This document shows positions 549 through 44,455 of a stretch of DNA of 64,000 nucleotides, piece by piece. The notes beneath the pieces are model-generated. The model had not been told where the DNA came from. It did not search any database and worked only from the letters and a program-made list of their open reading frames with translations. Made by a program: the position numbers and the translations under genes. Location: sequence record ON529857.1. One strand, written 5' to 3'. Numbering within the stretch: the stretch's first letter is position 1; each line of letters opens with the position of its first letter.

Positions 549-1631
549 TTACTGGGTGACCTTCCACCCAAACTCAGCGGCGTTGACTTCCGCGATCGTC
601 CAGTTGCCGCCGCCAGGGCGCGGCACGATGGACTGCTCGGCCCGGTAAGCCGTCGTCATATCGATCATGACCGCTCGGGGCGTGCCGTCCGCTTCCGTGC
701 CCGACAGGCGTGCGACAGGCGCCACCTTGCGCGGCGACATGCCGGTGGTCTTCATCGTCGTCACCGCGACAACCGCATGCACCGTCGCTGACGTGGCCGT
801 CGAATCCGCGAAGACATAGGTGTCCTTATTGCCCACCGTGTTGATCGCCGTATAGGAGGTGTTACCGTTCGGGGCGACTTCCGACACCGCCTGCCAGGGC
901 GTCGCCGCCCCCGTCGCGGTCGACTGCGTCGTGGTGCCCGGCCCGGTCGGCCGCAGGGTCTCCATCACGATGTCGCCCAGGAAACCGTTCATCGTCGATC
1001 CCGATGAATCCAGAATCAGGAAGTCATCCAGCCGCCAGTGCGTGCTGGTGTGATACCCTACAGTATAGACTGTCTTGGCTCCCGCCGTATAAAGGTCACC
1101 CGTGAAACTGATCACGGTTTCGCCATTGACGCGGATTTCCGCCGTCGCTCCGACATCGTCAATGTTCGCGACACGCATCTCAATCCGCTTCCACTCCGTC
1201 AAGGGCAGCGGCGTGGTGGCGGTCGCCATAAGGGTGCCGGTTCGATAAAGAGAGATGCAGTTGTTCGTGTCGATCGATGCGGTGATCCACGTCTCCGTCG
1301 CCACCGCCCAGGGACCACTACCCGAAGTCGGCGCTTGAGGTCCGATATTGTAGACGCTCATCACAGGCCGTACAACAGCTGGAGTATTATCCAGGTAGAC
1401 GCTCACGCTACAGATCACAGCGTCCTGCCCCACCCCCGCCAAGGGCGTCGGAAGCATCTTGGACAACATCCCCTGGTTCGAGCTCGTGCGGTTGATGCAG
1501 GGTCCACCCAGCCTTCCACCGGTCGCAAGAATCGCCATGTAACTGGAGCTAGACGTATAGGCGTCCCAGCGGTAAGTCAGGTCCGCAATAGCGGTGACAG
1601 AATCCATAGGGTCGCTAAAAATATGAGCCAT
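549..1631 (-). CDS. Virion/tail-associated protein, beta-rich (lectin-like)
   Basis: True start is MAHIFSD at 1631 (TAATG overlap with the upstream stop). Thr/Gly/Val-rich beta composition; last gene of the tail-fibre cluster. Confidence 0.65.
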   Translation of the reverse strand: MAHIFSDPMDSVTAIADLTYRWDAYTSSSSYMAILATGGRLGGPCINRTSSNQGMLSKMLPTPLAGVGQDAVICSVSVYLDNTPAVVRPVMSVYNIGPQAPTSGSGPWAVATETWITASIDTNNCISLYRTGTLMATATTPLPLTEWKRIEMRVANIDDVGATAEIRVNGETVISFTGDLYTAGAKTVYTVGYHTSTHWRLDDFLILDSSGSTMNGFLGDIVMETLRPTGPGTTTQSTATGAATPWQAVSEVAPNGNTSYTAINTVGNKDTYVFADSTATSATVHAVVAVTTMKTTGMSPRKVAPVARLSGTEADGTPRAVMIDMTTAYRAEQSIVPRPGGGNWTIAEVNAAEFGWKVTQ

Positions 1632-2704
1632 TAAGTTGGACTCCGAATGATAGTGATGTCTTGATGTGACGTTAGGACGGAATCCGCCAATCGATACTGC
1701 ACACAACTGATGTTAAAATGTGTAACCCTGGCCGCAGCCGCAGCGCGTTGCGCGATGACGTTGACGTATTCCTGGGTCAATCGAATGGGCTGAGGATCAT
1801 CCGGGTAAGCGTGAATCACCAAAGCGCCCGGATATCCCGCAACCCCACGCGCCCCGCCATAGCCGATAGAATTTCCAGGGTAGTCTGAATCAGTAATATT
1901 GGCAGGCACCGTTGTGACATCATCGCTGGCGAACTTGGGCGGCTGATGGAACGCGTCCGAAGGGACGATGTAGGATGACCCTCCACCGCCATGCCCCGTA
2001 TAGAGGCTATCCTGAAAATAGGCGCCGCCCCCGCCGTAGTAACCGCCGCCGCCCCCGCCGCCCGCGCGATTTTCGACTGTATCGATCGCATTGGCGTAAC
2101 CTCTCCCTCCTTGCAGAAATCCACCGCGTCCCGCCGGATTCTCGATGAGCGCCGCTTCAGGCAGCGGCACGCCTCCGGATGTCGGACTGCCTCCCGTCGC
2201 CTGGGCGGAACTTCCTCCGAAAGATGCGTTCAATCCGCCCGCAATCCCGCCCCGTCCTGCACCCGCAAGATACAAGCCCCCGCCGCCGCCGCCCGCCGCA
2301 ACCAAGGACAGGACGCCGGACTTCCAGAACATGGTGGAGCCGCCGCCGCCGCTTGCGATCGAACCTCGACCGCGACCCCCATTCCCGCCATCGGGCCAGC
2401 CGCCATATCCCCCGCGCCCGGTCACGCCCAACTCACCGCCGTTACCGACTTGGATCGCGACAACCTCCCCAGGCGTGACTTCGAACATATGGTTCACATA
2501 TCCGCCTGCCCCGCCGGCGCCCCATAGATCGGTGCGCGCCGGTCCTGCCCCGCCGGCGCCCCAGGCTTTGATTTCAATCAGTCGGCATCCTTCTGGAATG
2601 CGGCGAAGTTCCCGCAACCGCGTAAAGGTGAACAAGGTCATCCCCATCGCCAGCACAGGCGCCAGCGCAGATCGAGCCGCTGCGTAAAATCCTGGGATAA
2701 TCAT
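1631..2704 (-). CDS. Glycine-rich domain tail-fibre-associated protein
   Basis: IKAWGAGGAG...GGWPDGG...GGGGGGYYGGGG glycine-rich domain; coupled to the tail fibre by a TGATG overlap. Confidence 0.8.
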   Translation of the reverse strand: MIIPGFYAAARSALAPVLAMGMTLFTFTRLRELRRIPEGCRLIEIKAWGAGGAGPARTDLWGAGGAGGYVNHMFEVTPGEVVAIQVGNGGELGVTGRGGYGGWPDGGNGGRGRGSIASGGGGSTMFWKSGVLSLVAAGGGGGGLYLAGAGRGGIAGGLNASFGGSSAQATGGSPTSGGVPLPEAALIENPAGRGGFLQGGRGYANAIDTVENRAGGGGGGGYYGGGGAYFQDSLYTGHGGGGSSYIVPSDAFHQPPKFASDDVTTVPANITDSDYPGNSIGYGGARGVAGYPGALVIHAYPDDPQPIRLTQEYVNVIAQRAAAAARVTHFNISCVQYRLADSVLTSHQDITIIRSPT

Positions 2705-5700
2705 CAGACAGGCTCCAGATCACCGAAGAGAGACCAGACGTTCGTCGCGATTTGCACCAGAGACGCGACGGAGTTCTGCCGGCGCAACCTCGGCTGCATG
2801 TCATCGGGATATTCCAGCGCGACCCCGCTTCCAGCCAAGATCGTGACCCGTCCAATCCCACCACGCTGCAACGAGAACGAAGCGCCGATCGGGAAGGGCA
2901 CGTCGCTATTAGGTGGGATGGTGACGGTCTTGTCCGCCGACGACGTGATCTTCCGATATGCCCGCCGATCTTGAGCCGTGAGCAAATAATCCGGATCACC
3001 ATCGCCTTGAAGCGTGACCTTCAGGAGGTCCATCAGGGCGAGCGCATCCACGTCATCGGACGTCGCCAGGCGCCTCCAACCTTGCACATAAGGCGGCGCC
3101 AACACCACGATCAGACCGTCGCCGCCGTTAGGCGCAGGTCCCGTCACGTTTTCAGTGGGATAGCCCACGCCGACATTGACTTGGTAGTGTTCGTCCGCCG
3201 TGTGCGGCGGTACGAGCCGATCCCCCGCCTCCGTGACGCCGGTGGCGCCTGCGGCCAGGTTCAAATATCCCGAGCCGCCGCCTCCGGGTTGCCCATCACC
3301 GCCGCCGCCGCCGCCGCCATAATACCCGCCGCCGCCGCCGCCGCCGTCATCCGTCGAGCTCGTAAAGCGATCCACAGCGGCGGTGCCTTGCCCGCCTTGC
3401 AGATAGCCGCCGCGCTTCGGAGCACTCGCGGAATCATTTCCGTCATAGCCCCCCGCAGTCTGCGTGCCTCCAGTCCCGCCGTTCGACGTCGAACTCGATT
3501 GCCCCGTATCGCCGCCGCCTGCGCCCGCGTTCGTGGCTGTATATCCGGAGCCGCCGCCGCCGCCGCCGGCAACCGCCATGAGCACGCCATTGCGCCACAC
3601 ACGCGCCGATCCACCGCCGCCGCCGCCGGCCGTATCGCCCAATCCCCCGAAGCCGCCATCGGGCCAGCCGCCAGCGCCGCCGTAGTTCGAGCGATATCCG
3701 CCCTGGCCGCCTGACGGCACATCCAGTTCGATCAGGTCTCCCTCATTGACTGCAAAGGTAACTTGCGTGAAACCGCCCGCTGCCGGATTGCCGCCCGTGG
3801 AATAACGACCCGTGCCGCCGCCGCCACCCCACAGCTTGAACGTCAAGGAGCTGACCTGGGGGCCGACAACGAACGATTGCCGGGTGCCGGTCGCCGTATA
3901 ATACGTCGGCGCCGTCGATCCCGCCGGCACCAGGGTCGAGACCCAAGCGTTGCCCGCGCTATCGCGTTGTTGATAGACCTTGCCCAAGGGCGCCGTCGCC
4001 GTGGGCTCGCCCGTCCCCGAGAACTCCCCTTCGGCAGCCTCAGGAGACCACGCCCCATCGCGATAGGTCAGCACCTGACCGTTACCGGGAGCTGTCGACG
4101 TGACGTCAGTCAGGTCGTCCAGCGCAATGTTGCCGGTATACGGCCGCCAACCCTCCTCAAAGGTCGCCGGGCCGTTGTCCAGCAGGATCGTCACATAGCC
4201 CGCTTCGGACGCCCCCGTAAAGGTCGCCTTAGGGGCAATCGACGTTCCAGCCGCCGCCGCCGCACTCGTTGCGACGTAGACGCGGTTTCCGCCTCCCGTC
4301 GGCGCCACGCCGGACGACAACGTCGTCCACGGCGCGTCCGGCGTCAATGTCGAGGAATTCGGCCGGGTCACATAGAGACCCAGTCCCAAGCCGTCATGCA
4401 GGGCGCGCGCCGTCAGAGGCGCGCGCGCCATTCCGGAAGCCGCCGAGGAATAGGAGGTGTCATCCTCCCACACGACGCCCTGGAAGCTCTCGGACCAGGT
4501 CGACATACCGGCGATCTCATAAATCACCATGGCCCCGGCGCCGATTTGACCGCCGCCCGACACAAACGGCGTTTGAGCCGCCGGTTCCGCGCTCACCGCT
4601 TGCTTATAGGCCACGGAGGGGCGCACACGGGTCGAGCCGGAGACCGGCGACCCAGGCAGCAACGTCCACCCAGACCCCGCCGTCGCGAGGGTCTGGTCGC
4701 ACAACAGCGCCACGAGCCAATTCCCCGCCGTAGGGGCAGCGGGCAAGGTCGCCGTAATCGGCTGCGCCGACGTCGCCGAGTTGTACGCATCCGACAGGAT
4801 ATGCTGAACAACCGTCGGCGCGGGGGCGACAGTGGGAACATCCTTCAGGCTCTGCGAAATTTGGCCGGTGACTTCGTCGATATAAAGCGACCCAGACGGA
4901 CGTGGCGTAGTCGGCCCGCCTTGTCCCGAGCCGATCATGGCGTTGTCGAGAAACAGTCCATCCGCCGAACCCGCCGGCAACGGGCGCCACTTGCCCGCCT
5001 GATAACGCAGGACATCGTTTTCACCCGGCCCGCCGACCGGCATCTCGACATCGCCGATATCCGCCATATAGACGGTGCCGCCGGACGACGCCGGAAGCTC
5101 CTTCGCACGCCACACGCCATTATCGTAGGTCAGGACATAGTCTTGAACCGGCGTGCCCAGGGTGACGTCAGACAGATCGTCGAGCGCTTCCGGGGGATTG
5201 ATGGCGTAGTCGCTCTCAATCACCTCCAGCTCGGCCCAACTACGGGCCAGGATGGAGTTGACTCCTGCGATATTGCTGTTGGCGCGAATCTCGAAATAAT
5301 CGCCAGGCACGACGCTGATCACAGGCGTCGAAACGGTCATTTCGTTGTTGATGTAGCCATTCAGTGACGAGTTTCGGGCCGTCGTCCGAGTCACTTTGAG
5401 GGCCACACCATTACGGTAAATGTCCGCGTAATTGGAGCCGGCACCGGCGACGCTGGTGAAGGCGACAAACGCCGTCACCCGCACCTTAGTGATGCCGGAC
5501 GGAATCGTCAGGCGGGTCGGCGCGGAGGTCGTAAAGAACCCATCCGTATCGGACGTTTCAGCTTGCCATGGTACGGTGGTCGGGAAGGTGACGCTGGTCA
5601 GATCGGTGGTGCGCTCAACCAGAGCGCCGCGCCACGGCGCCGTCCAGTTGCTGGTGTTCTCCGCCCCCGTCGTCGGCGGGGCAGATCGCCATTGCCCTCC

Positions 5701-8700
5701 CACACGCGTGAGCACTTCACCGTCCGAAGGTGCGGTGGGGAAGCTGACGTCCGTCAGGTCGCCGAGGGAGTCATGGCCGAACTCCATGCCGGACTCATCG
5801 GACTTGACCCGAACAGGTTTACCTGCCTGCCCGATATAGGAAGGCGGCGCATCCGCCAGATCGGTGAAGAAGAGGTCCATCGGAGCGTGGAACTGGCGCG
5901 TCTGGTTGGGCGCCCAGCCCGTTTGTCCCGTCACCGTCCAAGCGGTCGTCCAGGTCGACCCATCATCCGACCATTGAACCTTGAAGGCGCGCGGAGACCG
6001 GGTCGGATAGTCCTGCGACCCCTTGAGGTCCAGATAACGCACCTCCACCGGAGCCGGGAAGGCGTAGGCGATCCACTGACCCACCGGATTGCCGGCGGCC
6101 GAGAACCAGGCGCCGCCCGTCACGCCGTCAAACGCCCCTTCTGGACCCTGACTTGAAGACTGCGAAGACGAGGCGGTCGCGGTTCCACCCGTCGCCAGCT
6201 GCGGCCCCGTCTTGGTCTGACGGAACCAGATGTCCTGGATACCGACCTGGCTGGCGTCGCCATCTGTTTGATCAATCAGCAAGCGCCAGTGAGCGTGCGA
6301 CCCATTGGAAGGAACACCCGTGCCCTGGGGACTTTCATTGATCCACTGCCCAGCGCGGTAGACCAGAATCTGACCGGCGGCCGGCGTCGTCAGGGTGACG
6401 TCGGTCAGTGCATCGAGATTCCCCGCTGACGGGGTTTCGTTCATCCAGACGCCGCCCAGATAGGTCAACACCTGGCCCGCGACGGGCGCCGTCGTCCAAG
6501 GCCCGACATCGGGCAAATCGCTCAAAGCGGGATGAGCCGAAGCGATCTTGATCAACCCGGAGAAGGCGTCAAACGCGCCGTAGTTCATCGTGCCGGTTCG
6601 CGTCGAGCGCACCACCAGGCGCACAGAGCGCGTCAGAGGCGGCAGAGCATGATGCACGCTACCCAGCTGCCACGTCGTCGTCGTGGTGTAGGCAGGCGAC
6701 GCGCTGCTGGTGATCAGCGTTCCAGTCTCATTCAACGCTTCCAGCGTAACGAGCGCGGTCGATCCGTCCGTGTTGACCCGACCATAACGGAACGCAACAT
6801 CGACCGAGCCGCGCCCGATGTCGATATAGTCCCACAAAGCGGCGTCAATCGCGATGGTCTGCGCCATCTCACAAGGCGACGTGTTCTGCGTCGCGCGGAA
6901 AATTCGCGTCCCCTCAAACGGCGCGCCCAGCGAACCGGCGGAGGTCTCCGAGGTGAAAGCTCCTGCCGTATTGGTCCACCCGGTCATACCGTCTTCGGCG
7001 CCCGGATTGACGATCAGCAGGGCGATCTGTTGACGATCGGGGTCCAGCCCCGCTCCCTCGACAGCCTCCGCCTTCCAGGAACCGTCCCGATAAACCAGCG
7101 CCTGCCCGTTTTGCGGTGGAACCGTGAGGTCGACGTCGGTCAGTTCGTCAAGGGACTTCGCGCCCCCTTCACCTTCGACAAGGAAACGCGCCCAGCTCGG
7201 CTCCAGGTCATCCCCGTACGACCGGACGGCATCCACATAAAGGACACCATAGGCCCAATGCGACGATCCGGCCGCCACCGTCCCGTTCATCGTCAAGTCT
7301 TGAGTCGGCTCGGTGCCGTAGTTGGTGGCGGCGGCGATCGACAACGTACCGGTAGAATCGGTGACCGGCTCGTTGAAGAACTCGCCGTCCGTCGCGACGG
7401 GCGCAGCGCCGCCCAGCTGGAACATCGCGCCTACCGCGAACGTAAAGGGGGTGGTGGCGGGGGTGGTGTAAGGCGTAGGCGCAAACGACCCCGCCGTGGA
7501 GCCGACGGCCTGGGCGGCCTGATAGAAGTCCGCCCAGTTTTCCCCCAGGCCAGACACCTCGTAAATGGCGTAGGCGTCTTCAGGTCCGCTCTGGGTGGTG
7601 ATATCCAGAGGCCAATCTTCAGCGGCCTGCACCTTACGGTAGGCCACCGTGACCGACAGGTCGGCTCCAACACCCTGGTTGACGGTGGTCCAGCCCGGAG
7701 CCAACGTCACGGCGCCGTTCGAGCCCGAAGCGTAGATGAGGATCAACCAGTTGCCGGCGATGGGGTTTTCAGCATAGCCCCAGGAGACCGCGCCGGCGTT
7801 CTCAACGATGCGTCCGTATTCTTGCACCACACGCGGCGCCAAGCGCGGCGTCGCACGCGACACCATCAAATCACCGGGGTCATGACGCATATAGAGCGAC
7901 CCGGAAGGCATGGGCCAGGTCGGCGCGCCTTCACCGGACTCAATCCAGCGATCGTCAGTGATGCTGATCGGATATTCAGTACCGGGGCCGCCGCCATTTT
8001 CCGGCGTCCGCGCTTCCCAACGTCCGCTTCCTTCAACACCCGTGTCCACCCACGTCAGGACTTGCCCATTGACGGGGTCATAGGGGACATGAACATCCGA
8101 CAGCATGTCCAAGTGGAGCAAGCCAGGGCGCCAGACGCCCGGAAGGTCGATCTGGGGATAATAGATCAGGACGCTGTCGGCGCCCGGCGGCGTCGTGACG
8201 ACGTCCACGTCGCCCAAGTCGCCCAGGTCTTCCGGCACAACGGGCTTGTCGACGAATTCCAGCCCGCTTTCATCCGTCTTGACGTGGACCAGCTTTCCGG
8301 CCTGCCCGACATAGGTGTCGGGGGTATCGACATCGTCCAAGAAGCGGGTCGTCAGTCCCGGCCGCGTGTAGACGCGCGTCTGCGACGCGGCCCAGGCGGT
8401 CTGACCCGTCACGGACCAGGCGGTGTACCAGGCCACGCCGTCGTCAGAGTATTGAACCCGAAAGGCTTCCGGTGAATAGTTCGGCGCCCAGCCGGCGACG
8501 CTCGAAGCCGTCAGCGCCACTTCCTGGAGAGAAACCGGCGCAGCAAAGTGGTAGCCGATCCAGGCGTCCGGCAGGTAAGCGGTCCAAGCGTCTCCCACGG
8601 TGCCGTCGAAGGCTCCGTTGATGTTGCCCCCAGTGCCAATCGCAGTGCCGCCTGTCGCGCGTTGAGGGCCTCCCGGCACATCACGCATGACGACTTCAGC

Positions 8701-11400
8701 CACCACCACAGTGGTGGTTCCCGGATAAGCGGCGGTATCGTCGACCACCACGCGCCAATAGGCGTGGCGCCCATAGTCGATCGGGGAGGTCAATGAAACC
8801 CAGCGACCAGCTCGCCGTCCCAAGAGGTCGCCCTCTTGCTGCCCGGCCGTATCGACATCGGTCAGGTCGTTCAGCGCCATTTCCGGAATGACAGAAGTGG
8901 CGGGGTCCTTCGGCTGCCAGATTCCATCCTTGAACGTCAGAACCTGATCTTCTTCAGGCGGCGCCGTGAATTGAACGTCGGTCAGTTCTTCCAGCGACGT
9001 CGCCGGGATCGGCAGCTCGACATATTCCAGGCGAACGCCGTCTTCATCGACGCGAACGAACTTTCCGGGATGCGCCGACATGGCGCCCGGTGAATCCGAC
9101 AGCATGGCGAACGCCAACTTGGCGCGGGCCGGTTCCGTGTCGACCGTTTCACCCGCGTTCCAACCGAAGGCGCGCGTCTCGCTCCAGGCGGTGATCCAGG
9201 TCAGACCGCCGTCGTCGGAGAATTGCATCGCCCAGGTGATCGGCAGCTGGCGAACCGCGCCGAAGGTCAGGGAGACGGCGTTGACCTCTTGCGGCTCAGC
9301 GAAGGTGTATCGCAGCCAGGTTTGGTCCGCACCATCGGCGCCGCTGCGCCAGAAAGTTGCGGGGTCGCCGTCGAAAGCCAGCGCGGATTCGAACCCGACT
9401 CCGGCGTCCGCGTTGGCGGAAGGCGTGCCGCCGACAGCCAGCTGCGGCAAACCAGAACCAGCACGCAGAACGAACTCAGCGATTTCCAGCGGGGGCGTAT
9501 CCGCCGTGCGGAAGAACAACCGCCAGTCGCGGTGTTCGCCGAACCTCAAACCGTCTCCCGACGGAACCTGAACGGGCGCGTGAATCCACTTCCCATCCCA
9601 ATAGGTCAGGACTTCTCCGTTCGTCAGCGCGCCTTCGGACAGGTCAACGTCCGTCAGATCATCCAACGCCTGAGGGATGGGCGTCGCGTTCGCCGGCTTG
9701 GCGACCCAGAAGCCGCTCTCGAACGTGAGGACGTCGCCTTCTTCCGGCGCCTTGATCGTGAAATTGACATCCGTCAGCTCGCTCAACGCCGTGACGCCGA
9801 TGACGCCGCCCGTCGGCGTTTCAGGACGCCACCAACCGTCACGGAACGTCAGAACCTGACCAGCGGCGGGGTCCGGTGCATCCACGTCCGTGATCTGATC
9901 CAGGCTATAGGGGCCGCCGCCTCCGCCGCCACCCGTAGGCGGCGGCACGAAGACCAGCCCCGTGCCCTGGGCGTTGACCGCCACGAACTTGTTCTGGGAG
10001 CCGCTGTAGTTGACCGGCGTGTCGCTCAAGCCGATGAACGCCATGTCCATGGCGTTAATCGCGAAGTCCAGGCCGGTCTCGCTGTCGTTGACGCGAACGA
10101 ACTTTCCGCCCTGACCCGCAAAGCTGGGAACGCCCGACAGCTCGGACAGAGCCGGCTTGACGTATTCCAGGCCCGTGTTGGTCGCATTGACGCGCACATA
10201 AAGGCCGCGCTGAGCCGCCGCCATAGGACCGGGACCGTCCGACAGTTCTTCGACCTTCAGCGTACCGAAAACAACGCCGCTTTGCGTCGCGTTGACTTTC
10301 AGAATCTTGTGGGCAGCATCCGTGTAGTTGTTCGGAGTGTCCGACAGCTCCGTCAGCTTCAACTCGGAGAAGATCAGCTGATCTTCATCCTGGCCGACCC
10401 GGACCAGCTTGCCCTTGTGACCCGTGAAGTTGGACGGCGTGTCGTGCAGCTCGGTGAAGTTGACCGGACCGCCGGTGCCGGTGACGTATTCCCAGCCAGT
10501 GCCGGCCGCATTAACGCGAACGTAAAGCAGCGCTTCGTTGATCGTGGGCGCGCCGGGACCATCCATCAGGTCCGCCACAGCCGGATTGCCGAACTCTACA
10601 GCGTCCGCAGCGGCGTTCACCCGCAAAAACTTACGCGCGTGCGTGTTGTAGGAGCTCGGGAAGTCCGAATTCTCACGCAGGTAAGGCCGCGCGAACGTCA
10701 GGGCCGTTCCGGACGCATTGACCACGACGTGACGATTGGCAGCCGAGGCGTAAGAGTTCGGCGTATCGTCCAGGTCGACGAAGGAATTGATGTTGGCGGC
10801 CGAAGTGATGAACTCCAACCGGTTGCCGGCGGCGTTCACCGCGACGAGCTTTCCAGCGCTGCCGCCCAGCGACGAGGGCGTGTCGCTCAGTTGCGTAAAG
10901 GCGGCCGTCCAGGTCCAGGGCTTCCACTGCGCCGTTGAAGCGTCATATCGCAGCAACTGCCCATCGGTCGGAAGCCCGTCGACGTCAGACAGATCGCGAA
11001 GCAGTCCCATACCGGAAATCGGGTCTGGAACCACGAAACGAATGTTGGACCCATCAGCGACCACCAAGCCGATCCGATTGGCGGGAAGCTCCACCGTCAA
11101 GCCCGAGGCGCCGGCGACCTTGAACACAATCGGAGCCGTCCCCCGATTCTCGACAGCGAACCAACGCGGCGTCGCCGGAATCGTGACCTGGCGCGCAACC
11201 GTATGGCCGGTGAACTGATGCAGGAAGTATTTGGTGAACTGATCCGTGTTCAGCGTCACGTCGCCGGCCGCCAGAGACAGCACCAGCGTATCGTTCGCCG
11301 ACGCCTCCAGGATCGCGATCGCAGTATTGATCGTGGCTTCCTTCTGCTCCTGGTTGGACCCGACCTGGGGCAGGTGAAGGATGGAGGTGTAATCAGTCAT
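2704..11400 (-). CDS. Long modular tail fibre / receptor-binding protein (2898 aa)
   Basis: DUF2793-like N-terminus (ILHLPQVGSNQEQKEATINTAIAIL), many L-x-D-L-x-D-V spacer repeats, three discoidin/F5-8-like modules (HxxWR...WSDDG), one Gly-rich domain and a fibre-type C-terminus (VPFPIG...LFGDL). Confidence 0.9.
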   Translation of the reverse strand: MTDYTSILHLPQVGSNQEQKEATINTAIAILEASANDTLVLSLAAGDVTLNTDQFTKYFLHQFTGHTVARQVTIPATPRWFAVENRGTAPIVFKVAGASGLTVELPANRIGLVVADGSNIRFVVPDPISGMGLLRDLSDVDGLPTDGQLLRYDASTAQWKPWTWTAAFTQLSDTPSSLGGSAGKLVAVNAAGNRLEFITSAANINSFVDLDDTPNSYASAANRHVVVNASGTALTFARPYLRENSDFPSSYNTHARKFLRVNAAADAVEFGNPAVADLMDGPGAPTINEALLYVRVNAAGTGWEYVTGTGGPVNFTELHDTPSNFTGHKGKLVRVGQDEDQLIFSELKLTELSDTPNNYTDAAHKILKVNATQSGVVFGTLKVEELSDGPGPMAAAQRGLYVRVNATNTGLEYVKPALSELSGVPSFAGQGGKFVRVNDSETGLDFAINAMDMAFIGLSDTPVNYSGSQNKFVAVNAQGTGLVFVPPPTGGGGGGGPYSLDQITDVDAPDPAAGQVLTFRDGWWRPETPTGGVIGVTALSELTDVNFTIKAPEEGDVLTFESGFWVAKPANATPIPQALDDLTDVDLSEGALTNGEVLTYWDGKWIHAPVQVPSGDGLRFGEHRDWRLFFRTADTPPLEIAEFVLRAGSGLPQLAVGGTPSANADAGVGFESALAFDGDPATFWRSGADGADQTWLRYTFAEPQEVNAVSLTFGAVRQLPITWAMQFSDDGGLTWITAWSETRAFGWNAGETVDTEPARAKLAFAMLSDSPGAMSAHPGKFVRVDEDGVRLEYVELPIPATSLEELTDVQFTAPPEEDQVLTFKDGIWQPKDPATSVIPEMALNDLTDVDTAGQQEGDLLGRRAGRWVSLTSPIDYGRHAYWRVVVDDTAAYPGTTTVVVAEVVMRDVPGGPQRATGGTAIGTGGNINGAFDGTVGDAWTAYLPDAWIGYHFAAPVSLQEVALTASSVAGWAPNYSPEAFRVQYSDDGVAWYTAWSVTGQTAWAASQTRVYTRPGLTTRFLDDVDTPDTYVGQAGKLVHVKTDESGLEFVDKPVVPEDLGDLGDVDVVTTPPGADSVLIYYPQIDLPGVWRPGLLHLDMLSDVHVPYDPVNGQVLTWVDTGVEGSGRWEARTPENGGGPGTEYPISITDDRWIESGEGAPTWPMPSGSLYMRHDPGDLMVSRATPRLAPRVVQEYGRIVENAGAVSWGYAENPIAGNWLILIYASGSNGAVTLAPGWTTVNQGVGADLSVTVAYRKVQAAEDWPLDITTQSGPEDAYAIYEVSGLGENWADFYQAAQAVGSTAGSFAPTPYTTPATTPFTFAVGAMFQLGGAAPVATDGEFFNEPVTDSTGTLSIAAATNYGTEPTQDLTMNGTVAAGSSHWAYGVLYVDAVRSYGDDLEPSWARFLVEGEGGAKSLDELTDVDLTVPPQNGQALVYRDGSWKAEAVEGAGLDPDRQQIALLIVNPGAEDGMTGWTNTAGAFTSETSAGSLGAPFEGTRIFRATQNTSPCEMAQTIAIDAALWDYIDIGRGSVDVAFRYGRVNTDGSTALVTLEALNETGTLITSSASPAYTTTTTWQLGSVHHALPPLTRSVRLVVRSTRTGTMNYGAFDAFSGLIKIASAHPALSDLPDVGPWTTAPVAGQVLTYLGGVWMNETPSAGNLDALTDVTLTTPAAGQILVYRAGQWINESPQGTGVPSNGSHAHWRLLIDQTDGDASQVGIQDIWFRQTKTGPQLATGGTATASSSQSSSQGPEGAFDGVTGGAWFSAAGNPVGQWIAYAFPAPVEVRYLDLKGSQDYPTRSPRAFKVQWSDDGSTWTTAWTVTGQTGWAPNQTRQFHAPMDLFFTDLADAPPSYIGQAGKPVRVKSDESGMEFGHDSLGDLTDVSFPTAPSDGEVLTRVGGQWRSAPPTTGAENTSNWTAPWRGALVERTTDLTSVTFPTTVPWQAETSDTDGFFTTSAPTRLTIPSGITKVRVTAFVAFTSVAGAGSNYADIYRNGVALKVTRTTARNSSLNGYINNEMTVSTPVISVVPGDYFEIRANSNIAGVNSILARSWAELEVIESDYAINPPEALDDLSDVTLGTPVQDYVLTYDNGVWRAKELPASSGGTVYMADIGDVEMPVGGPGENDVLRYQAGKWRPLPAGSADGLFLDNAMIGSGQGGPTTPRPSGSLYIDEVTGQISQSLKDVPTVAPAPTVVQHILSDAYNSATSAQPITATLPAAPTAGNWLVALLCDQTLATAGSGWTLLPGSPVSGSTRVRPSVAYKQAVSAEPAAQTPFVSGGGQIGAGAMVIYEIAGMSTWSESFQGVVWEDDTSYSSAASGMARAPLTARALHDGLGLGLYVTRPNSSTLTPDAPWTTLSSGVAPTGGGNRVYVATSAAAAAGTSIAPKATFTGASEAGYVTILLDNGPATFEEGWRPYTGNIALDDLTDVTSTAPGNGQVLTYRDGAWSPEAAEGEFSGTGEPTATAPLGKVYQQRDSAGNAWVSTLVPAGSTAPTYYTATGTRQSFVVGPQVSSLTFKLWGGGGGTGRYSTGGNPAAGGFTQVTFAVNEGDLIELDVPSGGQGGYRSNYGGAGGWPDGGFGGLGDTAGGGGGGSARVWRNGVLMAVAGGGGGGSGYTATNAGAGGGDTGQSSSTSNGGTGGTQTAGGYDGNDSASAPKRGGYLQGGQGTAAVDRFTSSTDDGGGGGGGYYGGGGGGGDGQPGGGGSGYLNLAAGATGVTEAGDRLVPPHTADEHYQVNVGVGYPTENVTGPAPNGGDGLIVVLAPPYVQGWRRLATSDDVDALALMDLLKVTLQGDGDPDYLLTAQDRRAYRKITSSADKTVTIPPNSDVPFPIGASFSLQRGGIGRVTILAGSGVALEYPDDMQPRLRRQNSVASLVQIATNVWSLFGDLEPV

Positions 11401-18300: not shown

Positions 18301-18912
18301 CTCGGTGGTCTGTTCCCCCACCATCACTTCGGCGGTGATCTGCGGAATGCGGTTGCCGAAATCCTCAAGAGGCATGTCGTCGAACAGAATGTAGGCCAGC
18401 CCCCGGAACGCCGGAGCATTACCTTCGCCAAGCTGCTGCTCGATCGCGGAATCCGGCAACTGCTCTTCGTCGCCCATGTAGAAGCGCATCCGATATTTGG
18501 ACTGACCCTGACGGTCGAAATGCCCCGTCACGAACTGCTTCATGGACTGCGGCTGGGTCGCCTGGCTGGGGCTGATGCCGCCCGTAGCGTCATAGATCAG
18601 CTTGTTGTCAGCCCAGATGCGGCGGATGTCCCGGACCGTACCCGCGCACAGTCCCATCGCGAAGGTGCAGAAATAGGTATACTGGTTGTAAGACCCGCCC
18701 TTGCCCGACTTCTTCTTCTTCTTTTCCCGCATCTCTGCGGACCAGATCATGTTTCCGGGGACGCGCGTCAGCCCGAACACCCAAGGGATGGCGGCGCCGT
18801 ATGTCGAGGCGCTGATCTTGAGGTCTTTCAGGCGCGGACCTTCGGACGGGAACAGATAACTGATCCCAACCTGCGCCACCGCCATCATCGCCATGCTGAA
18901 CGGATCAGCCAT
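15358..18912 (-). CDS. Tail-tip/central-fibre protein (GTA-like J/Tal family), copy 2
   Basis: Start moved to MADPFSMAMM at 18912 by homology with copy 1; same conserved motifs. Confidence 0.9.
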   Translation of the reverse strand: MADPFSMAMMAVAQVGISYLFPSEGPRLKDLKISASTYGAAIPWVFGLTRVPGNMIWSAEMREKKKKKSGKGGSYNQYTYFCTFAMGLCAGTVRDIRRIWADNKLIYDATGGISPSQATQPQSMKQFVTGHFDRQGQSKYRMRFYMGDEEQLPDSAIEQQLGEGNAPAFRGLAYILFDDMPLEDFGNRIPQITAEVMVGEQTTEVAVTPLREQDGTTELSRDRAAGEAVFDFARAIFYLRYDTAIKSVSLRDGVARVVYENKTLGFTDEAPLKRLLCGSPNGAVYVLYGPSGGASNLARLDPYSLQAVAKVEDTPAFIRGASAASSGSTTQFLAIAADGQARLYDGVSLELLWSGALGAGARAVGRDPTDLEAPPIFYVVRPGGGQLTVSRLTQAGMEDVGQIAGDQIGPVLWDAGMAGVLAFVRQAGQSRLVKWNEDTADIGWTKAITGYPDEIAPESRTLESQVGWLHGGRVYLLDAATGASLDGEDPGTTVGQVDWADYLQRYPQVLADYYNGGWAYADSPEAYAQYDYMTNGASEGRTLTYIQSTVGAGIPLKEPYVGGAAGLQAIDAARGLLIGLDGIDGVVKATNIATGVSVGTIVARLLEEGGMPLMRTDLSALYQIPIRGYGWASATDIKGVFDELRRVFLFDLVERDGLLVAVMRGDDTNGLGMPVEVIPQDALGSSSPDATDYWSETRLQEMDLPARVTFSYMNVDRDFETSTARSARITNPVPTMFSRQQVSMEINIVMTAQEAKAQVHKMLYSQWTERTRHNTRLPWAYLALDPGDTVNVAMKDGRLYEDRLHRTEIGADFVMATESYSQDSGAYEGWDDLPADGGAGSGGSSGILPPGLAVPFVFNTPLMRDMDDQGGAVSIYYVGLGNGMEDQAWGGGALFRSTNNLDYEVIPALDEDLEWGTIVGDVLPPPPFGAFSLDWTSQVTIRPAVDWFEIESITDDELWAGGNLALIGEEIIQFRDCAQNPDGTWTIWNLLRARRGTQYACASHGAGERFVFLSSATVGFAVDQTSARGQARFFKAAATGTSLATQPVLTIAYEPRDLMPYAPSDIRREKVAEDAKVTWQRCVRFGGNMQDGTAVVPLGERAERYEAYVLDAPFSGDLSRGRGPDIYLRKFELTAPEFLYTAADQAADGVDLATQPLHLVIYQLSDAVGRGFPAPRSIEPDEVF

Positions 18913-18914
18913 TC

Positions 18915-19331
18915 TTAGTCCTCCACGCCGGGAAAATCGAGCACACAGCGCAGGCGGGTCGACCAGTAGCCGTCCCATTCCTCTTCCACGACGGCGCGCT
19001 TGGCGAGCGACGCATGGAGCAGGTAGAATCGATCGTATTTTTGAGAAATGAAGCCGATGTGACACGGCTGGTGTTGATCGCGCAGAATCACGACCGCTCC
19101 GGGAGCCACAACCTGAGGGTCCCGATAGACCAGGAATTTCTTGACGTGATCTACGAAGCGACCGTCAGGATTCCGAGAATAGCCTTCGATGTCCTCGTAG
19201 GGGATCGAAAAGGCGTCCCCCACCAGGCAGACCAGGCCAATGCAGTCCACCCCCATGGGCGACCGCCCGCGATGACGCCAGGGTTTTCCCAGGTGCCGAC
19301 GCGCTTCAGTGATGATCTCTTGACGCAGCAT
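18915..19331 (-). CDS. NlpC/P60 family tail-associated peptidase
   Basis: GRSPMGVDCIGLV catalytic Cys, CHIGF and LLHAS His motifs; expected position in a GTA-like tail-tip module. Confidence 0.9.
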   Translation of the reverse strand: MLRQEIITEARRHLGKPWRHRGRSPMGVDCIGLVCLVGDAFSIPYEDIEGYSRNPDGRFVDHVKKFLVYRDPQVVAPGAVVILRDQHQPCHIGFISQKYDRFYLLHASLAKRAVVEEEWDGYWSTRLRCVLDFPGVED

Positions 19332-37807: not shown

Positions 37808-38006
37808 GGATTTCGTCAACGATTGACAGCCAAAATATTTCTTGACGAGGTCAAAAACACATCCCGACCGGGCGGGGTCCGGTCGAGACATGCCGACGAT
37901 AGATAAGGAGGACTCCAAGGTCACGGAATAGAACCCCGCCGCGACAATGACGTCTTTCTCCACCTAGCAGGTTACTCTTCCGACTGTCAACACATTACGT
38001 CAAAAA

Positions 38007-38089
38007 TGGCGACGCGCCCCGGACTCGAACCGGGCCTCTCAACCTTCGGAGGGTTGCGCCTGACGATGATCCTGCTCGGCCTGCGCGTC
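38007..38089 (-). tRNA. tRNA-Arg(CCG), enlarged D-loop
   Basis: Acceptor GACGCGC/GCGCGTC, loop CTCCGAA, T-loop TTCGAGT, CCA; 17-nt D-loop. Confidence 0.8.
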
Positions 38090-38109
38090 ATGTTTGACAG
38101 AAAAGGTGG

Positions 38110-38192
38110 TGGCGCCCTGGGTCTGATTCGAACAGACCTTCTCAACTCCTGCTACGGCTACTGGTTTCGTAGACCAGCCCGGTTACCAGGGC
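38110..38192 (-). tRNA. Atypical tRNA-Arg(ACG), D-arm nearly absent, long variable region
   Basis: Acceptor GCCCTGG/CCAGGGC, anticodon arm CTGGT-CTACGAA-ACCAG, T-arm and CCA intact; only 8 nt between acceptor and anticodon stems. Confidence 0.65.
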
Positions 38193-38222: not shown

Positions 38223-38306
38223 TGGCTCTTGCGGTAGGACTCGAACCTACAAGCCTTTCGGCGCTCGCTTAACAGGCGAGTGCGGCTACCATTTCGCCAC
38301 GCAAGA
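38223..38306 (-). tRNA. tRNA-Asn(GTT) with class II-type variable arm
   Basis: Loop CTGTTAA; variable arm CGCCGAAAGGCTT; CCA encoded. Confidence 0.8.
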
Positions 38307-41856: not shown

Positions 41857-41975
41857 TGGAGCGGGTGGGAAGACTTGAACTTCCGCCTCCGGGTTAGCGA
41901 CCCGGCACTCCTGATCTCGGCCGAGACCCGCAACCCGGTTCGGCCGAACCTGCTGCGCCCTAGAGCTTCACCCGC
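41857..41975 (-). ncRNA. tRNA-like element (GCT loop, Gly-type acceptor) with ~50-nt D-loop insertion
   Basis: Acceptor GCGGGTG/CACCCGC, U73, CCA, T-arm and anticodon arm CCGGG-TCGCTAA-CCCGG; the D-stem encloses two palindromic hairpins. Confidence 0.7.
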
Positions 41976-42974: not shown

Positions 42975-42981
42975 GGGGTGG

Positions 42982-43066
42982 TGGCGGTGCGCCAGGGAAT
43001 CGAACCCTCGACCTTGCGGTCGGCTACGGTTTTCAAGGCCGCTTGTCCCCATGGACGCTGCACACC
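42982..43066 (-). tRNA. tRNA-Ser(TGA)
   Basis: Loop CTTGAAA, long variable arm, G73, CCA. Confidence 0.82.
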
Positions 43067-43071
43067 AATGA

Positions 43072-43161
43072 TGGCGGACGGCGAGGGATTTGAACCCCCG
43101 GACCCTTGCGGGCCGCCTGCTTTCCGGGCAGGTGCCTTAAGCCGGACTCAGCCAGCCGTCC
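43072..43161 (-). tRNA. tRNA-Ser(GGA), C33
   Basis: Loop CCGGAAA, long variable arm, G73, CCA. Confidence 0.88.
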
Positions 43162-43166
43162 GTTGT

Positions 43167-43384
43167 TGGTGGAGGCGAGGGGATTCGAACCCCCGTAGAC
43201 GCCGAACCCCCGCATTACCAGGGGCCGATCTTCGGTTTAGAACGCGTGTGCCGCCCTGACCATCTTCCGCAGGCCAGGAGGTCTATCGTAACGACCCCGT
43301 CGATCGGTTGCCTCTGCGCCCCGGTTTTACCCGGACCGTTATTCTGTTCCACGGTGCTCATGCCGAAACCCGAGCGACGCCCCC
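43167..43384 (-). ncRNA. ssrA: Short one-piece tmRNA-like gene (218 nt)
   Basis: Ala-type acceptor GGGGGCG/CGCCTCC with G3-U70, A73 and CCA; T-arm GGGGG-TTCGAAT-CCCCT; stemless D-loop ending GGTTTCGGC; no anticodon arm. Confidence 0.65.
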
Positions 43385-43393
43385 GTGAAGAAA

Positions 43394-43481
43394 TGGAGGA
43401 TGGTGTGGGATTCGAACCCACGGAACCTTGCGGTCCTCCGGCTTTCGAAACCGGTGCGATCGGCCACTCCGCCAACCATCC
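43394..43481 (-). tRNA. tRNA-Ser(CGA)
   Basis: Loop TTCGAAA, long variable arm, CCA (U73). Confidence 0.88.
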
Positions 43482-43488
43482 ATATCAG

Positions 43489-43674
43489 TCAGACGGTCGC
43501 CGGACTGTAGTTGTCGATGTCGTCGACCCGGATCGCCGTTCCCGCCGCGATCTGGCGGTCGGCGCTCAACAGGTCGGCGACCAGGGCCTCCGCCGAGACG
43601 TCGCCTCCGGTGGTGGCGAACTTGACGTTCACCATTCCGTTGTCGTACATCTCGGCGATCGCTGAGCGATCCAT
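43489..43674 (-). CDS. Small hypothetical protein inside tRNA operon 2
   Basis: AAAGG before MDRSAIAE; natural amino-acid composition. Confidence 0.55.
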   Translation of the reverse strand: MDRSAIAEMYDNGMVNVKFATTGGDVSAEALVADLLSADRQIAAGTAIRVDDIDNYSPATV

Positions 43675-43707
43675 GGCAGGCCTTTCTGCCGGCATCACCG
43701 GCGGTTA

Positions 43708-44271: not shown

Positions 44272-44353
44272 TGGAGAACCACGGTGGAGTCGAACCACTT
44301 GCGCCTGGATTAAAAGTCCAATCCCGGCCACCCGGATTTAACGCTCGTGGTCC
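44272..44353 (-). tRNA. tRNA-Lys(TTT), enlarged D region
   Basis: Loop CTTTTAA, T-arm, CCA; ~25 nt between acceptor and anticodon stems. Confidence 0.75.
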
Positions 44354-44368
44354 TTGATTCTCAAATAT

Positions 44369-44455
44369 TGGAGGATATGGTGGGACTCGAACCCACGATG
44401 GACTTTCGTCAGAGGATTAAGAGCCCTCCCCTCTCGCCGCTGAGGTGACATATCC
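44369..44455 (-). tRNA. tRNA-Lys(CTT) with long variable arm
   Basis: Loop CTCTTAA; variable arm TGACGAAAGTCCATC; CCA. Confidence 0.8.

What the first reader, a model, noticed from the sequence alone, without database searches (positions are those of the whole stretch)
43167..43384. Miniature one-piece tmRNA-like gene in an alphaproteobacterial phage
Seen: a perfect Ala acceptor (G3-U70, A73, CCA), T-arm, stemless D-loop with GGTTTC and a plausible P2 (GGC..GAGC / GTTC..GTC) enclose only ~170 nt. A candidate tag starts at GCA ACC GAT (43311, with A at -4) and reads ATDRRGRYDRPPGLRKMVRAAHAF-stop (43237). Established: alphaproteobacterial hosts use a permuted two-piece tmRNA with tags ending in AA, and normal tmRNAs are ~350 nt. 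Inference: a stripped-down phage tmRNA, co-induced with operon 2 tRNAs, could rescue stalled ribosomes while adding a non-canonical, perhaps non-degradative, tag. The resume frame is uncertain.
Basis: partly seen in the sequence, partly recalled or inferred. Interest (0 to 1): 0.75.

Follow-up and report, generated by a model that had tools for sequence, protein, structure and literature searches.

The report
Giant-armed alanine tRNA-like phage RNA

Summary
The window is Brevundimonas phage Kikimora. ARAGORN and Rfam at gathering score call nothing; the Rfam tmRNA model scores 32 bits (cut-off 47) on the tRNA-like ends only. The phage already has a normal two-piece tmRNA about 75 kb away, outside the window. 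I found homologues in six sister phages and six uncultivated phage contigs of 136-608 kb, always inside tRNA arrays. Across clades, 25 of 41 helix positions show compensatory changes. They support a 7-bp acceptor, a real D-stem, an anticodon-like arm with a 9-13-nt purine-rich loop, a GUAAAA hairpin, a ~115-nt domain at the variable-arm position, and a T-arm. The proposed P2 helix and the tag peptide are not conserved, and the overlapping ORF loses its start codon in other clades. G3·U70 stays fixed in six of seven clades while neighbouring pairs covary. Most likely this is an alanine-charged, non-decoding tRNA/tmRNA mimic of a new family. Its function is unproven.

The parts
43167..43384 (-). 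Whole element, 218 nt: tRNA-Ala-like RNA with a giant variable-arm domain
   Evidence: It is 96-100% identical in 7 Brevundimonas phages and ~78% identical in L015. More distant copies are in L038, L042, L047, L141 and L142.
43378..43384 (-). Acceptor stem, 5' strand GGGGGCG (G3 at 43382)
   Evidence: It pairs 7/7 with 43171-43177. Positions 4:69, 5:68 and 6:67 covary across clades, while G3·U70 is fixed in 6 of 7 clades.
43356..43375 (-). D-arm: 4-bp stem GCUC/GAGC with a 12-nt loop GGGUUUCGGCAU
   Evidence: The stem has four versions across clades, and each is self-complementary. The loop resembles the tmRNA D-loop consensus only in the Kikimora, L015 and L038 clades.
43335..43355 (-). Anticodon-like arm: stem ACCGU/ACGGU with an 11-nt purine-rich loop (43340-43350)
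   Evidence: The stem has five or six versions across clades. The loop is 9-13 nt and never 7, so it is not a decoding anticodon loop.
43321..43334 (-). Hairpin 3: CCGG/CCGG with hexaloop GUAAAA
   Evidence: The stem covaries (CCAG/CUGG, UCGGA/UCCGA, UCAGG/CCUGA). The loop is GUAAAA, GUAAAU or GUAACA in 6 of 7 clades.
43312..43320 (-). Helix A, 5' strand (GGCGC-A-GAG): base of the giant variable-arm domain
   Evidence: It pairs with 43198-43206. Four of five positions show double-compensatory change across clades.
43198..43206 (-). Helix A, 3' strand (UUC-G-GCGUC), 3 nt upstream of the T stem
43302..43307 (-). Inner helix Pb, 5' strand CCGAUC
   Evidence: It pairs with 43225-43230. All 6 positions show double-compensatory change (UGGAUU/AGUCCA, GGUGUG/CACACC, GGUUGA/UCAACC).
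43225..43230 (-). Inner helix Pb, 3' strand GAUCGG
43251..43281 (-). Apical hairpin of the inner domain (CCUCCUGGCC ... GGUCAGGGCGG)
   Evidence: Within the clade, pair 106:131 varies CG/UA/UG, and Gurke breaks two pairs. A hairpin of variable length occupies this place in other clades.
43239..43243 (-). Pseudoknot target GUUCU, which pairs with the anticodon-like loop (AGAAU at 43341-43345 or GGAAC at 43346-43350)
   Evidence: The homologous pairings are AGAACAG/CUGUUCU (L038), AAAGAC/GUCUUU (L042, L047), AGGAA/UUCCU (L141) and AAACG/CGUUU (L142). Within-clade changes at loop positions 42-44 are transitions that keep pairing.
43207..43224 (-). Hairpin Hx: CCCCUG / GUAAUG / CGGGGG; the motif GGUAAUGC is invariant in all clades
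   Evidence: Within the clade the pairs change C-G to U·G to U-A. Other clades have U·U pairs at the two central positions.
43178..43194 (-). T-arm: GGGGG / UUCGAAU / CCCCU
   Evidence: The stem covaries (GCGGG/CCCGU, GCCGG/CCGGU).
43167..43177 (-). Acceptor 3' strand CGCCUCC (U70 at 43173), discriminator A73 (43170) and encoded CCA (43167-43169)
   Evidence: A73 is present in the six G3·U70 clades. CCA is encoded in the Kikimora, L015 and L038 clades but not in L042, L047 or L141.
43237..43311 (-).

Best explanation
43167-43384(-) encodes a stable, highly structured RNA of a previously unannotated family. It is an alanine-tRNA-like cloverleaf whose variable region has grown into a multi-helix domain of about 115 nt. 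Its anticodon loop is replaced by a 9-13-nt purine-rich loop that base-pairs with a conserved strand of that domain, forming a pseudoknot that locks the lower half of the molecule. Shown here: the gene is conserved in the tRNA arrays of 13 large phages; every scaffold helix covaries; the pseudoknot covaries; and G3·U70 and A73 are kept in six of seven clades while neighbouring acceptor pairs change. Inferred: it is co-transcribed with the flanking tRNAs, released by RNase P and 3' tRNA processing, charged with alanine by the host AlaRS, and acts on the translation apparatus as a non-decoding tRNA/tmRNA mimic that does not template a tag. One possible mode is occupying or modulating factors or ribosomal sites that accept Ala-tRNA-like ligands, by analogy with the CDS-less tRNA-like-domain-only tmRNA of mycobacteriophage DS6A; a similar TLD-only molecule was reported to inhibit tmRNA. 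It is not the phage's tmRNA and probably does not encode the proposed tag.
For: Identity and context. Conservation. Family members inside tRNA arrays, none called by ARAGORN. Independent single-sequence folds give the same architecture in all clades. Covariation: 193/196 own-strand pairs against 530/760 cross-clade pairs, and 25 of 41 positions with double-compensatory change. RNAalifold on the MAFFT alignment shows acceptor 5:68 as GC/CG/AU with 3:70 always G·U. Pseudoknot: the best complement of the loop lies at the homologous site in every clade; per-clade shuffled-loop p values are 0.013-0.23, which I combined by Fisher's method to about 0.002; in 4 of 5 clades no other window matches as well. 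The canonical permuted tmRNA is elsewhere in the same genome. The tag is not conserved. No promoter- or terminator-like site flanks the element on its strand, and spacers to neighbouring tRNAs are 5-9 nt. Precedent for CDS-less phage tmRNA-like RNAs that inhibit tmRNA: PMC4131195 and PMC11915505.
Against: No direct evidence of transcription, processing or alanylation. The only RNA-library contigs that cover the element also cover neighbouring genes at similar depth. One clade (L142) has an all-Watson-Crick acceptor without G3·U70 and with discriminator G, so alanine charging is not universal in the family. A U[AG]A triplet is kept at one structural position in 6 of 7 clades. The few within-clade substitutions in the frame that ends there are 4 synonymous to 1 non-synonymous by my count, so a short templated peptide is not excluded. 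The functional step, meaning what the RNA binds and does, is pure inference.
Confidence: 0.55

Rival explanations
1. A genuine stripped-down one-piece tmRNA. It would be charged with alanine, enter stalled ribosomes and switch translation onto an internal frame, either the 24-codon frame from 43311 or a shorter one ending at the same UAA.
For: G3·U70, A73 and CCA are present. The Rfam tmRNA model is the only family hit, and in L015, L038, L042 and L047 it uses exactly the full-length boundaries. The large domain emerges at the variable-arm position, which is the direction of the tmRNA connector helix (PMC3985003). U[AG]A is kept at one structural site in 6 of 7 clades, preceded by a U-rich single-stranded stretch and a hairpin. 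Within-clade changes in that frame are 4 synonymous to 1 non-synonymous by my count, roughly p = 0.02-0.06.
Against: All scores are below the gathering threshold (20.9-32 bits against 47), and ARAGORN calls nothing. There is no PK1. A covarying D-stem and an anticodon-like arm occupy the space that SmpB fills in tmRNA. Peptides from the equivalent start differ in length, frame and C-terminus, and L038 and L141 have in-frame stops. The inner domain is almost invariant at the nucleotide level between L042 and L047 while the scaffold stems diverge. The 'stop' segment is explained by the pseudoknot. The phage already has a canonical tmRNA.
Confidence: 0.15
2. A tRNA-shaped scaffold that only provides processing signals and stability for an embedded functional RNA domain, such as a protein-binding or anti-defence RNA. 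Charging would be irrelevant to its function.
For: The inner domain and the loops GGUAAUGC and GUAAAA are the most conserved parts, while the scaffold stems drift by compensation. L142 keeps the domain but has a non-alanine acceptor. Relatives carry other large structured RNAs at tRNA loci, for example GOLLD with an embedded tRNA in phiCbK-like phages.
Against: A G·U wobble held at exactly 3:70, with A73, in six clades whose neighbouring pairs all change to Watson-Crick alternatives is hard to explain unless AlaRS recognition is selected.
Confidence: 0.2
3. The region is translated as the overlapping ORF MSTVEQNNGPGK... (ATG at 43361, stop at 43215).
For: The ORF is open in the Kikimora clade.
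Against: The ATG is ATA in L015, and the equivalent site in L038 has no ATG. Most within-clade substitutions are non-synonymous in this frame, for example L/H/P at one codon. The frame is broken by indels in other clades. The substitution pattern fits base pairing instead. It is not annotated in any of the seven genomes.
Confidence: 0.01
4. A decaying tRNA-Ala duplicate disrupted by an insertion, that is, a pseudogene.
For: The D stem, A26 and the T-arm resemble the phage tRNA-Ala(UGC) 320 nt upstream. Variable-arm expansion is common in this array.
Against: Conservation with compensatory evolution across seven clades, down to ~78% identity or less, together with invariant loops and a covarying pseudoknot, is incompatible with neutral decay.
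Confidence: 0.02

Closest known systems
One-piece tmRNA (SsrA; Rfam RF00023)
   Same: Alanine acceptor stem with G3·U70, A73 and CCA; a T-arm; in the Kikimora, L015 and L038 clades a D-loop resembling GG-UUCG-C; a large insert closed by a helix that abuts the T-arm at the variable-arm position; sub-threshold hits to the tmRNA model.
   Different: About 218 nt instead of about 350. It has a covarying D-stem and an anticodon-like arm. It has no PK1-PK4 and no conserved resume codon or tag. It has a different long-range pseudoknot, between the anticodon-like loop and the inner domain. It scores below the Rfam gathering threshold and is invisible to ARAGORN.
Permuted two-piece tmRNA of Alphaproteobacteria and of phiCbK-like phages (RF04321, RF01849)
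   Same: It occurs in the same phage lineage. The acceptor stem and the 3' T-arm/acceptor end are nearly identical to those of the Caulobacter-phage tmRNA (GGGGGCG/CGCCUCC; 28 of 30 nt).
   Different: The gene order is not permuted. There is no canonical tag; the true phage tmRNAs encode ...AREAIAA or ...ERVLLAA. Kikimora carries both genes, so the element is an additional RNA and not a replacement.
CDS-less, tRNA-like-domain-only tmRNAs (mycobacteriophage DS6A; some plastid and jakobid mitochondrial forms)
   Same: Phage or organelle tmRNA relatives that keep the alanine tRNA-like domain but lack a tag reading frame. A TLD-only molecule similar to the DS6A form was reported to inhibit tmRNA, perhaps by titrating SmpB (PMC4131195, PMC11915505).
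   Different: Those are about 65 nt with little beyond the tRNA-like domain. This element adds a D-stem, an anticodon-like arm and a conserved ~115-nt pseudoknotted domain.
Class II (long-variable-arm) tRNAs and tRNA-Ala
   Same: A full cloverleaf top with an extra arm between the anticodon and T arms. The D stem GCUC/GAGC, A26 and the T-arm resemble the phage's own tRNA-Ala. Neighbouring tRNA-Lys and tRNA-Asn also have extra variable-arm hairpins.
   Different: The variable region (hairpin 3 plus the domain closed by helix A) is about 140 nt rather than 13-21 nt. The anticodon loop is 9-13 nt and engaged in a pseudoknot. There is no tRNA model hit.
Large structured phage RNAs at tRNA loci (GOLLD, ROOL) and tRNA-like modules such as YrlA
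   Same: Size and structural complexity, occurrence in phages next to or fused with tRNA-like units, and unknown function.
   Different: No sequence or model similarity. Here the tRNA-like part forms the termini of the RNA and carries aminoacylation identity elements.

Membership tests
tmRNA (SsrA) | tRNA-like domain: 7-bp acceptor with G3·U70, a discriminator, CCA and a T-arm | tested here: met
   It is kept in 6 of 7 clades while neighbouring pairs covary.
tmRNA (SsrA) | Detected by the curated models (Rfam gathering score) or by ARAGORN | tested here: not met
   ARAGORN calls nothing. RF00023 scores 32 bits against a cut-off of 47, and 20.9-31.9 bits for the homologues.
tmRNA (SsrA) | D-loop analogue without a D-stem, and no anticodon arm; that space is taken by SmpB | tested here: not met
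   A 4-bp D stem and a 4-5-bp anticodon-like stem both covary across clades.
tmRNA (SsrA) | Connector helix P2 that joins the tRNA-like domain to the rest and abuts the T-arm | tested here: inconclusive
A covarying helix (43312-43320 / 43198-43206) abuts the T-arm in the variable-arm position.
tmRNA (SsrA) | Pseudoknot PK1 immediately upstream of the resume codon | tested here: not met
   No such compact pseudoknot was found. The only supported pseudoknot joins the anticodon-like loop to a segment about 95 nt downstream.
tmRNA (SsrA) | Conserved tag reading frame with a resume codon and a conserved hydrophobic C-terminus before the stop | tested here: not met
   Frames, lengths and C-termini differ between clades, and L038 and L141 have in-frame stops. 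A short frame ending at a positionally conserved U[AG]A cannot be excluded.
tmRNA (SsrA) | Alanylation, SmpB and EF-Tu binding, and trans-translation | not testable with these tools
   These need biochemistry. I did not search the phage genome for an SmpB gene.
Canonical tRNA | Cloverleaf with acceptor, D, anticodon and T arms and a D-loop/T-loop elbow | tested here: met
   All four arms are present and covary. GG is present in the D-loops, and the T-loop is UUCGAAU in five of seven clades including Kikimora (UUCGACU in L142).
Canonical tRNA | A 7-nt anticodon loop that presents an anticodon; detected by tRNA models | tested here: not met
   The loop is 9-13 nt, purine-rich and paired in a pseudoknot. 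There is no ARAGORN call and no RF00005 hit listed for the element.
CDS-less TLD-only tmRNA (DS6A type) | An alanine tRNA-like domain with essentially nothing else, about 65 nt | tested here: not met
   The element is 178-240 nt with a conserved inner domain. The resemblance is functional and hypothetical only.

The most novel reading that the evidence does not exclude
An RNA-only relative of tmRNA. It would be an alanine-charged tRNA-like RNA in which a pseudoknotted RNA 'lower half' (the anticodon-like arm locked to the variable-arm domain) does the job that SmpB does for tmRNA, letting it enter ribosomes with an empty A site. It might or might not template a very short peptide ending at the conserved U[AG]A. 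In evolutionary terms it would have the architecture expected of an intermediate between a long-variable-arm tRNA-Ala and tmRNA.
Probability: 0.12. Interest if true: 0.92.

Novelty: new variant of a known kind. Interest (0 to 1): 0.72.

Why it matters
Apart from tRNA-Ala itself, tmRNA is to my knowledge the only known bacterial RNA that keeps the G3·U70 alanine identity. A second, structurally distinct family that keeps it, with a full D-arm, a non-decoding anticodon-like arm and a large pseudoknotted domain at the position of the tmRNA connector helix, would be a new type of tRNA mimic encoded by jumbo phages. It could show a new way for phages to manipulate translation or ribosome rescue, and it bears on how tmRNA arose from tRNA. 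In practical terms, the standard annotators miss both this RNA and the phage's real two-piece tmRNA, and the genome paper reported that no tmRNA could be detected in these phages.

Tried and rejected
- **Alternative 5' end at 43298.** The Rfam alignment for Kikimora starts at 43298 (GGGGUCG). I rejected it because it pairs only 6 of 7, the same model uses the full-length boundaries in four other clades, and the upstream 86 nt are conserved and covary.
- **Intron-containing tRNA-Ala.** I found no 7-nt anticodon loop or anticodon stem that survives comparison. The candidate 3' strand (UGCGG) covaries with a different partner. There is no group I intron hit.
Segment 26-29 also covaries with 178-181 between Kikimora and L015, but this alternative is absent in L038 and L042, while the D-stem is universal.
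- **Descent from the phage's own tmRNA tag region.** The two share the 10-mer CCUCCUGGCC. I judged this to be chance, because the site varies within the clade and differs in other clades.
- **MAFFT plus RNAalifold on all clades.** This misaligned the D and anticodon-like arms, so I did the covariation test helix by helix from single-sequence folds.
- **Homologue searches that gave only chance hits.** These were the 5' 23-mer, the loop motif, the two-motif scans of IMG/VR (two chance hits besides L015) and of the metagenome set, the genome-collection scan, the looser final IMG/VR scan, and a search through the neighbouring 69-aa protein.
- **Expression.** Public runs hold only fragments. One small RNA-virome library has a contig over 43160-43329 at 98.8% identity, but it also has contigs over neighbouring genes, so transcription is not shown.
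- **Not done.** I did not build a covariance model, because a 218-position model was likely to exceed the calibration limit and collections cannot be scanned with one. I did not search for an SmpB gene in the phage.

Full report
**Context.** The window matches Brevundimonas phage vB_BpoS-Kikimora (ON529857.1, 312.6 kb, Dolichocephalovirinae) at 100% identity. The finding lies on the minus strand inside a long tRNA array, in a 232-nt interval between tRNA-Ser(CGA) at 43394-43481 and tRNA-Ser(GGA) at 43072-43161. The interval carries no annotation in any of the seven sequenced relatives: Kikimora, Gurke, Marchewka, Bambus, Papperlapapp, Domovoi and Kabachok. The smaller phage Bajun has the two tRNA-Ser genes next to each other with nothing between them.

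**Checking the observation.** The sequence features are real and sit at the stated coordinates.
- GGGGGCG (43384-43378) pairs 7/7 with CGCCUCC (43177-43171), giving G3·U70. It is followed by A73 and an encoded CCA.
- A standard T-arm precedes the 3' acceptor strand.
- The frame GCA ACC GAU ... UUC UAA (43311-43237) is open.

ARAGORN finds no tmRNA, and Rfam finds nothing at gathering score. A permissive Rfam search of 351 nt gives only the tmRNA model RF00023 at 32 bits against a cut-off of 47. That alignment rests on the acceptor and T-arm and uses a poorer alternative 5' end at 43298. Folding energy alone is unremarkable, with z = -1.75.

**The phage already has a tmRNA.** The last 30 nt of the element match an unannotated site in phiCbK-like Caulobacter phages. 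That site is a permuted two-piece tmRNA: ARAGORN calls it 'tmRNA*' with tag VADNDNDVVAFASAREAIAA, and RF04321 scores 70-72 bits. It lies beside a GOLLD RNA and upstream of two tRNA-Met genes. BLAST with that tmRNA found a second site in the Brevundimonas jumbo phages. In Kikimora it lies at about 154566-154911 of the record, roughly 75 kb from the element and outside this window. It sits between tRNA-Cys and tRNA-Met and scores 57.7 bits on RF04321, above the gathering score of 47. Its tag ends ...NDNFAAGERVLLAA. ARAGORN misses it, and the genome paper states that no tmRNA could be detected (PMC10070969). The element under study is therefore an additional RNA, not the phage's tmRNA.

**A family.** The element is 96-100% identical in the seven Brevundimonas phages. 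Pattern scans of IMG/VR found divergent homologues in six uncultivated phage contigs:

| Locus | Coordinates (strand) | Contig size |
|---|---|---|
| L015 | 3022-3240 (-) | 543 kb, ~78% identical |
| L038 | 9668-9882 (-) | 608 kb |
| L042 | 9570-9757 (-) | 277 kb |
| L047 | 1475-1665 (-) | 436 kb |
| L141 | 121-298 (+) | 455 kb |
| L142 | 7551-7790 (-) | 136 kb |

All lie inside tRNA arrays on the same strand as the tRNAs, 0-24 nt downstream of the preceding tRNA where one lies immediately upstream (L038, L042, L047, L141). ARAGORN calls none of them. In L015, L038, L042 and L047 the Rfam tmRNA model finds them with exactly the full-length boundaries, at 20.9-31.9 bits. A looser final scan added no members. 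The metagenome scan returned only the same 543-kb contig plus chance hits, and the genome scan only chance hits.

**Structure.** Independent minimum-free-energy folds of each clade give one architecture:
- a 7-bp acceptor stem;
- a 4-bp D-stem;
- an anticodon-like arm of 4-5 bp with a 9-13-nt purine-rich loop;
- a small hairpin with loop GUAAAA, GUAAAU or GUAACA (absent in L142);
- a long-range helix A that closes a large domain and ends 2-5 nt before the T stem;
- the T-arm.

Inside the domain are a helix Pb, a U-rich single strand, an apical hairpin of variable length, the conserved segment GUUCUAAACC, and a hairpin whose motif GGUAAUGC is invariant in every clade. I tabulated helices clade by clade. 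Each clade's 5' strands pair with their own 3' strands at 193 of 196 positions (98.5%), against 530 of 760 (69.7%) when strands are swapped between clades. Twenty-five of 41 helix positions show double-compensatory change:

| Helix | Positions with double-compensatory change |
|---|---|
| Acceptor | 5/7 |
| D | 2/4 |
| Anticodon-like | 2/4 |
| Hairpin 3 | 3/4 |
| Helix A | 4/5 |
| Pb | 6/6 |
| T | 2/5 |
| Hx | 1/6 |

On the MAFFT alignment, acceptor pair 5:68 is G-C, C-G or A-U, while 3:70 is always G·U in the ten sequences used. The D-stem occurs as GCUC/GAGC, GCCU/AGGC, GCCA/UGGC and GCCG/CGGC, so the D-loop is not stemless.

**A pseudoknot explains the 'stop codon' segment.** In every clade the best complement to the oversized anticodon-like loop anywhere downstream lies at the same homologous place, immediately 5' of the ...AAACC segment. 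The sequences differ between clades:

| Clade | Loop / target |
|---|---|
| Kikimora | AGAAU or GGAAC / GUUCU |
| Marchewka, L015 | AGAAC / GUUCU |
| L038 | AGAACAG / CUGUUCU |
| L042, L047 | AAAGAC / GUCUUU |
| L141 | AGGAA / UUCCU |
| L142 | AAACG / CGUUU |

The three variable loop positions within the Kikimora clade change only by transitions that keep pairing with U144, U143 and G142. Against composition-preserving shuffles of each loop, the per-clade p values are 0.013-0.23. I combined them by Fisher's method to about 0.002. In four of five clades no other 9-nt window in the molecule matches the loop as well.

**Reading frames.** From the structurally equivalent start, the frames give ATDRRGRYDRPPGLRKMVRAAHAF (Kikimora), a 31-residue peptide ending ...KSSPW that stops in the GGUAAUGC loop (L015), MEAGTFRYSRVLW (L038) and MVWDIFYRLATSL (L042, L047). 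L141 has an in-frame stop at that position. Nothing resembling a conserved tag C-terminus exists.

Some observations keep a short templated peptide from being excluded. A U[AG]A triplet occupies the same structural position in six of seven clades. A short frame (AUG or GCU, then GUN, then codons up to the stop; 8 or 13 codons) recurs. The five within-clade substitutions in the frame ending there are 4 synonymous to 1 non-synonymous by my count. I regard this as weak, because the same sites are also explained by base pairing, and because the inner domain is nearly invariant at the nucleotide level between L042 and L047 while their scaffold stems differ at many positions.

The overlapping MSTVEQ ORF is not a gene. 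Its ATG is ATA in L015 and the equivalent site in L038 has no ATG. Most substitutions are non-synonymous, and no genome annotates it.

**Expression.** No promoter- or terminator-like site flanks the element on its strand, which fits co-transcription with the array. Public runs hold only fragments. One small RNA-virome library has a contig over 43160-43329 at 98.8% identity, but it also has contigs over neighbouring tRNAs and a CDS at similar low depth. DNA carry-over cannot be excluded.

**Interpretation.** The evidence shows a selected, compactly folded RNA gene with the termini and elbow of a tRNA and with alanine identity elements. A wobble pair held at exactly 3:70 while the pairs around it are replaced by other Watson-Crick pairs argues that AlaRS recognition is under selection in six clades. 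L142 is the exception. The anticodon-like loop cannot decode, because it is too long and is used for tertiary pairing.

The large domain leaves the tRNA body at the variable-arm position. That is the direction in which the tmRNA connector helix leaves its tRNA-like domain (PMC3985003). However, the D-stem and the anticodon-like arm occupy the space that SmpB fills in tmRNA.

My best reading, at 0.55 overall, is an alanine-charged tRNA/tmRNA mimic that neither decodes nor templates a tag and that acts on the translation machinery. I am much more confident in the identity than in the function. The nearest precedent in kind is the CDS-less, tRNA-like-domain-only tmRNA of mycobacteriophage DS6A; a similar TLD-only molecule inhibits tmRNA (PMC4131195, PMC11915505).

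The rivals are:
- a true mini-tmRNA (0.15);
- a tRNA-shaped scaffold for an unrelated functional RNA domain (0.20);
- a protein-coding ORF (0.01);
- a pseudogene (0.02).

**Novelty.** No Rfam family covers it, and my literature searches found no description. I did not check it against the tmRNA sequence database itself. It is a new family within the broad kind of tRNA-like or tmRNA-like RNAs. The most novel reading not excluded is an RNA-only tmRNA relative in which an RNA pseudoknot replaces SmpB (about 0.12).

Noticed in passing
Outside the window: ON529857.1 ~154566-154911 (L013:14567-14912, minus strand); also L011:1490-1835 (Gurke) and L012:1490-1745 (Kabachok): A canonical permuted two-piece tmRNA (RF04321, 57.1-57.7 bits; gathering score 47), whose tag in Kikimora and Gurke ends ...NDNFAAGERVLLAA, lies between tRNA-Cys and tRNA-Met. 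It is unannotated, ARAGORN misses it, and the genome paper reported that no tmRNA could be detected.
   Followed up: yes
L009:173-659 and L010:173-659 (Caulobacter phages Magneto and Ccr10), minus strand: A GOLLD RNA (RF02032, 165-169 bits) with an embedded tRNA lies about 500 nt from the permuted tmRNA in phiCbK-like phages. The embedded tRNA is Lys in Magneto and Gly in Ccr10. No GOLLD hit appeared in the syntenic Kikimora region.
   Followed up: partly
window 38005-38090, 38106-38190, 44275-44352 and 42975-43071 (all minus strand); also 41860-41931: Further tRNA-like genes that ARAGORN does not call. They have good acceptor and T arms and plausible anticodon loops (Arg-CCG-like, Arg-ACG-like, Lys-UUU-like and Ser-like) but aberrant or expanded D-arm regions. 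41860-41931 is a weak Rfam tRNA hit (31 bits). The 42975-43071 homologue is annotated as tRNA-Ser only in Domovoi.
   Followed up: partly
window 44369-44455 (tRNA-Lys, 87 nt) and 38223-38306 (tRNA-Asn, 84 nt), minus strand: These normally class I tRNAs carry an extra 3-bp variable-arm hairpin capped by a GAAA tetraloop. Variable-arm expansion seems to be a habit of this phage lineage. tRNA-Cys (87 nt) and tRNA-Met (89 nt) elsewhere in the genome are also over-long.
   Followed up: partly
L013:18364-18462 and 18849-18918, next to the CDS at L013:16927-18297 annotated 'RNA-binding protein'; also L142:6897-7033 and L042:3479-3604: Sub-threshold YrlA (Y RNA-like) hits of 31-39 bits (gathering score 69) lie beside a 456-aa 'RNA-binding protein' gene. 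This may be a Ro60/Y-RNA module in these phages.
   Followed up: no
window 43489-43698, minus strand: A 69-aa ORF between tRNA-Ala and tRNA-Ser is annotated as hypothetical in all seven Brevundimonas phages. No relatives were found in IMG/VR.
   Followed up: partly
L052:~1040-1135, plus strand (IMGVR_UViG_3300029258_002722): A ~92-nt tRNA-like sequence with a G3·U70-type acceptor (GGGAUAG.../...CUAUCUCCACCA) and a long extra arm. It is unrelated in sequence to the element.
   Followed up: no
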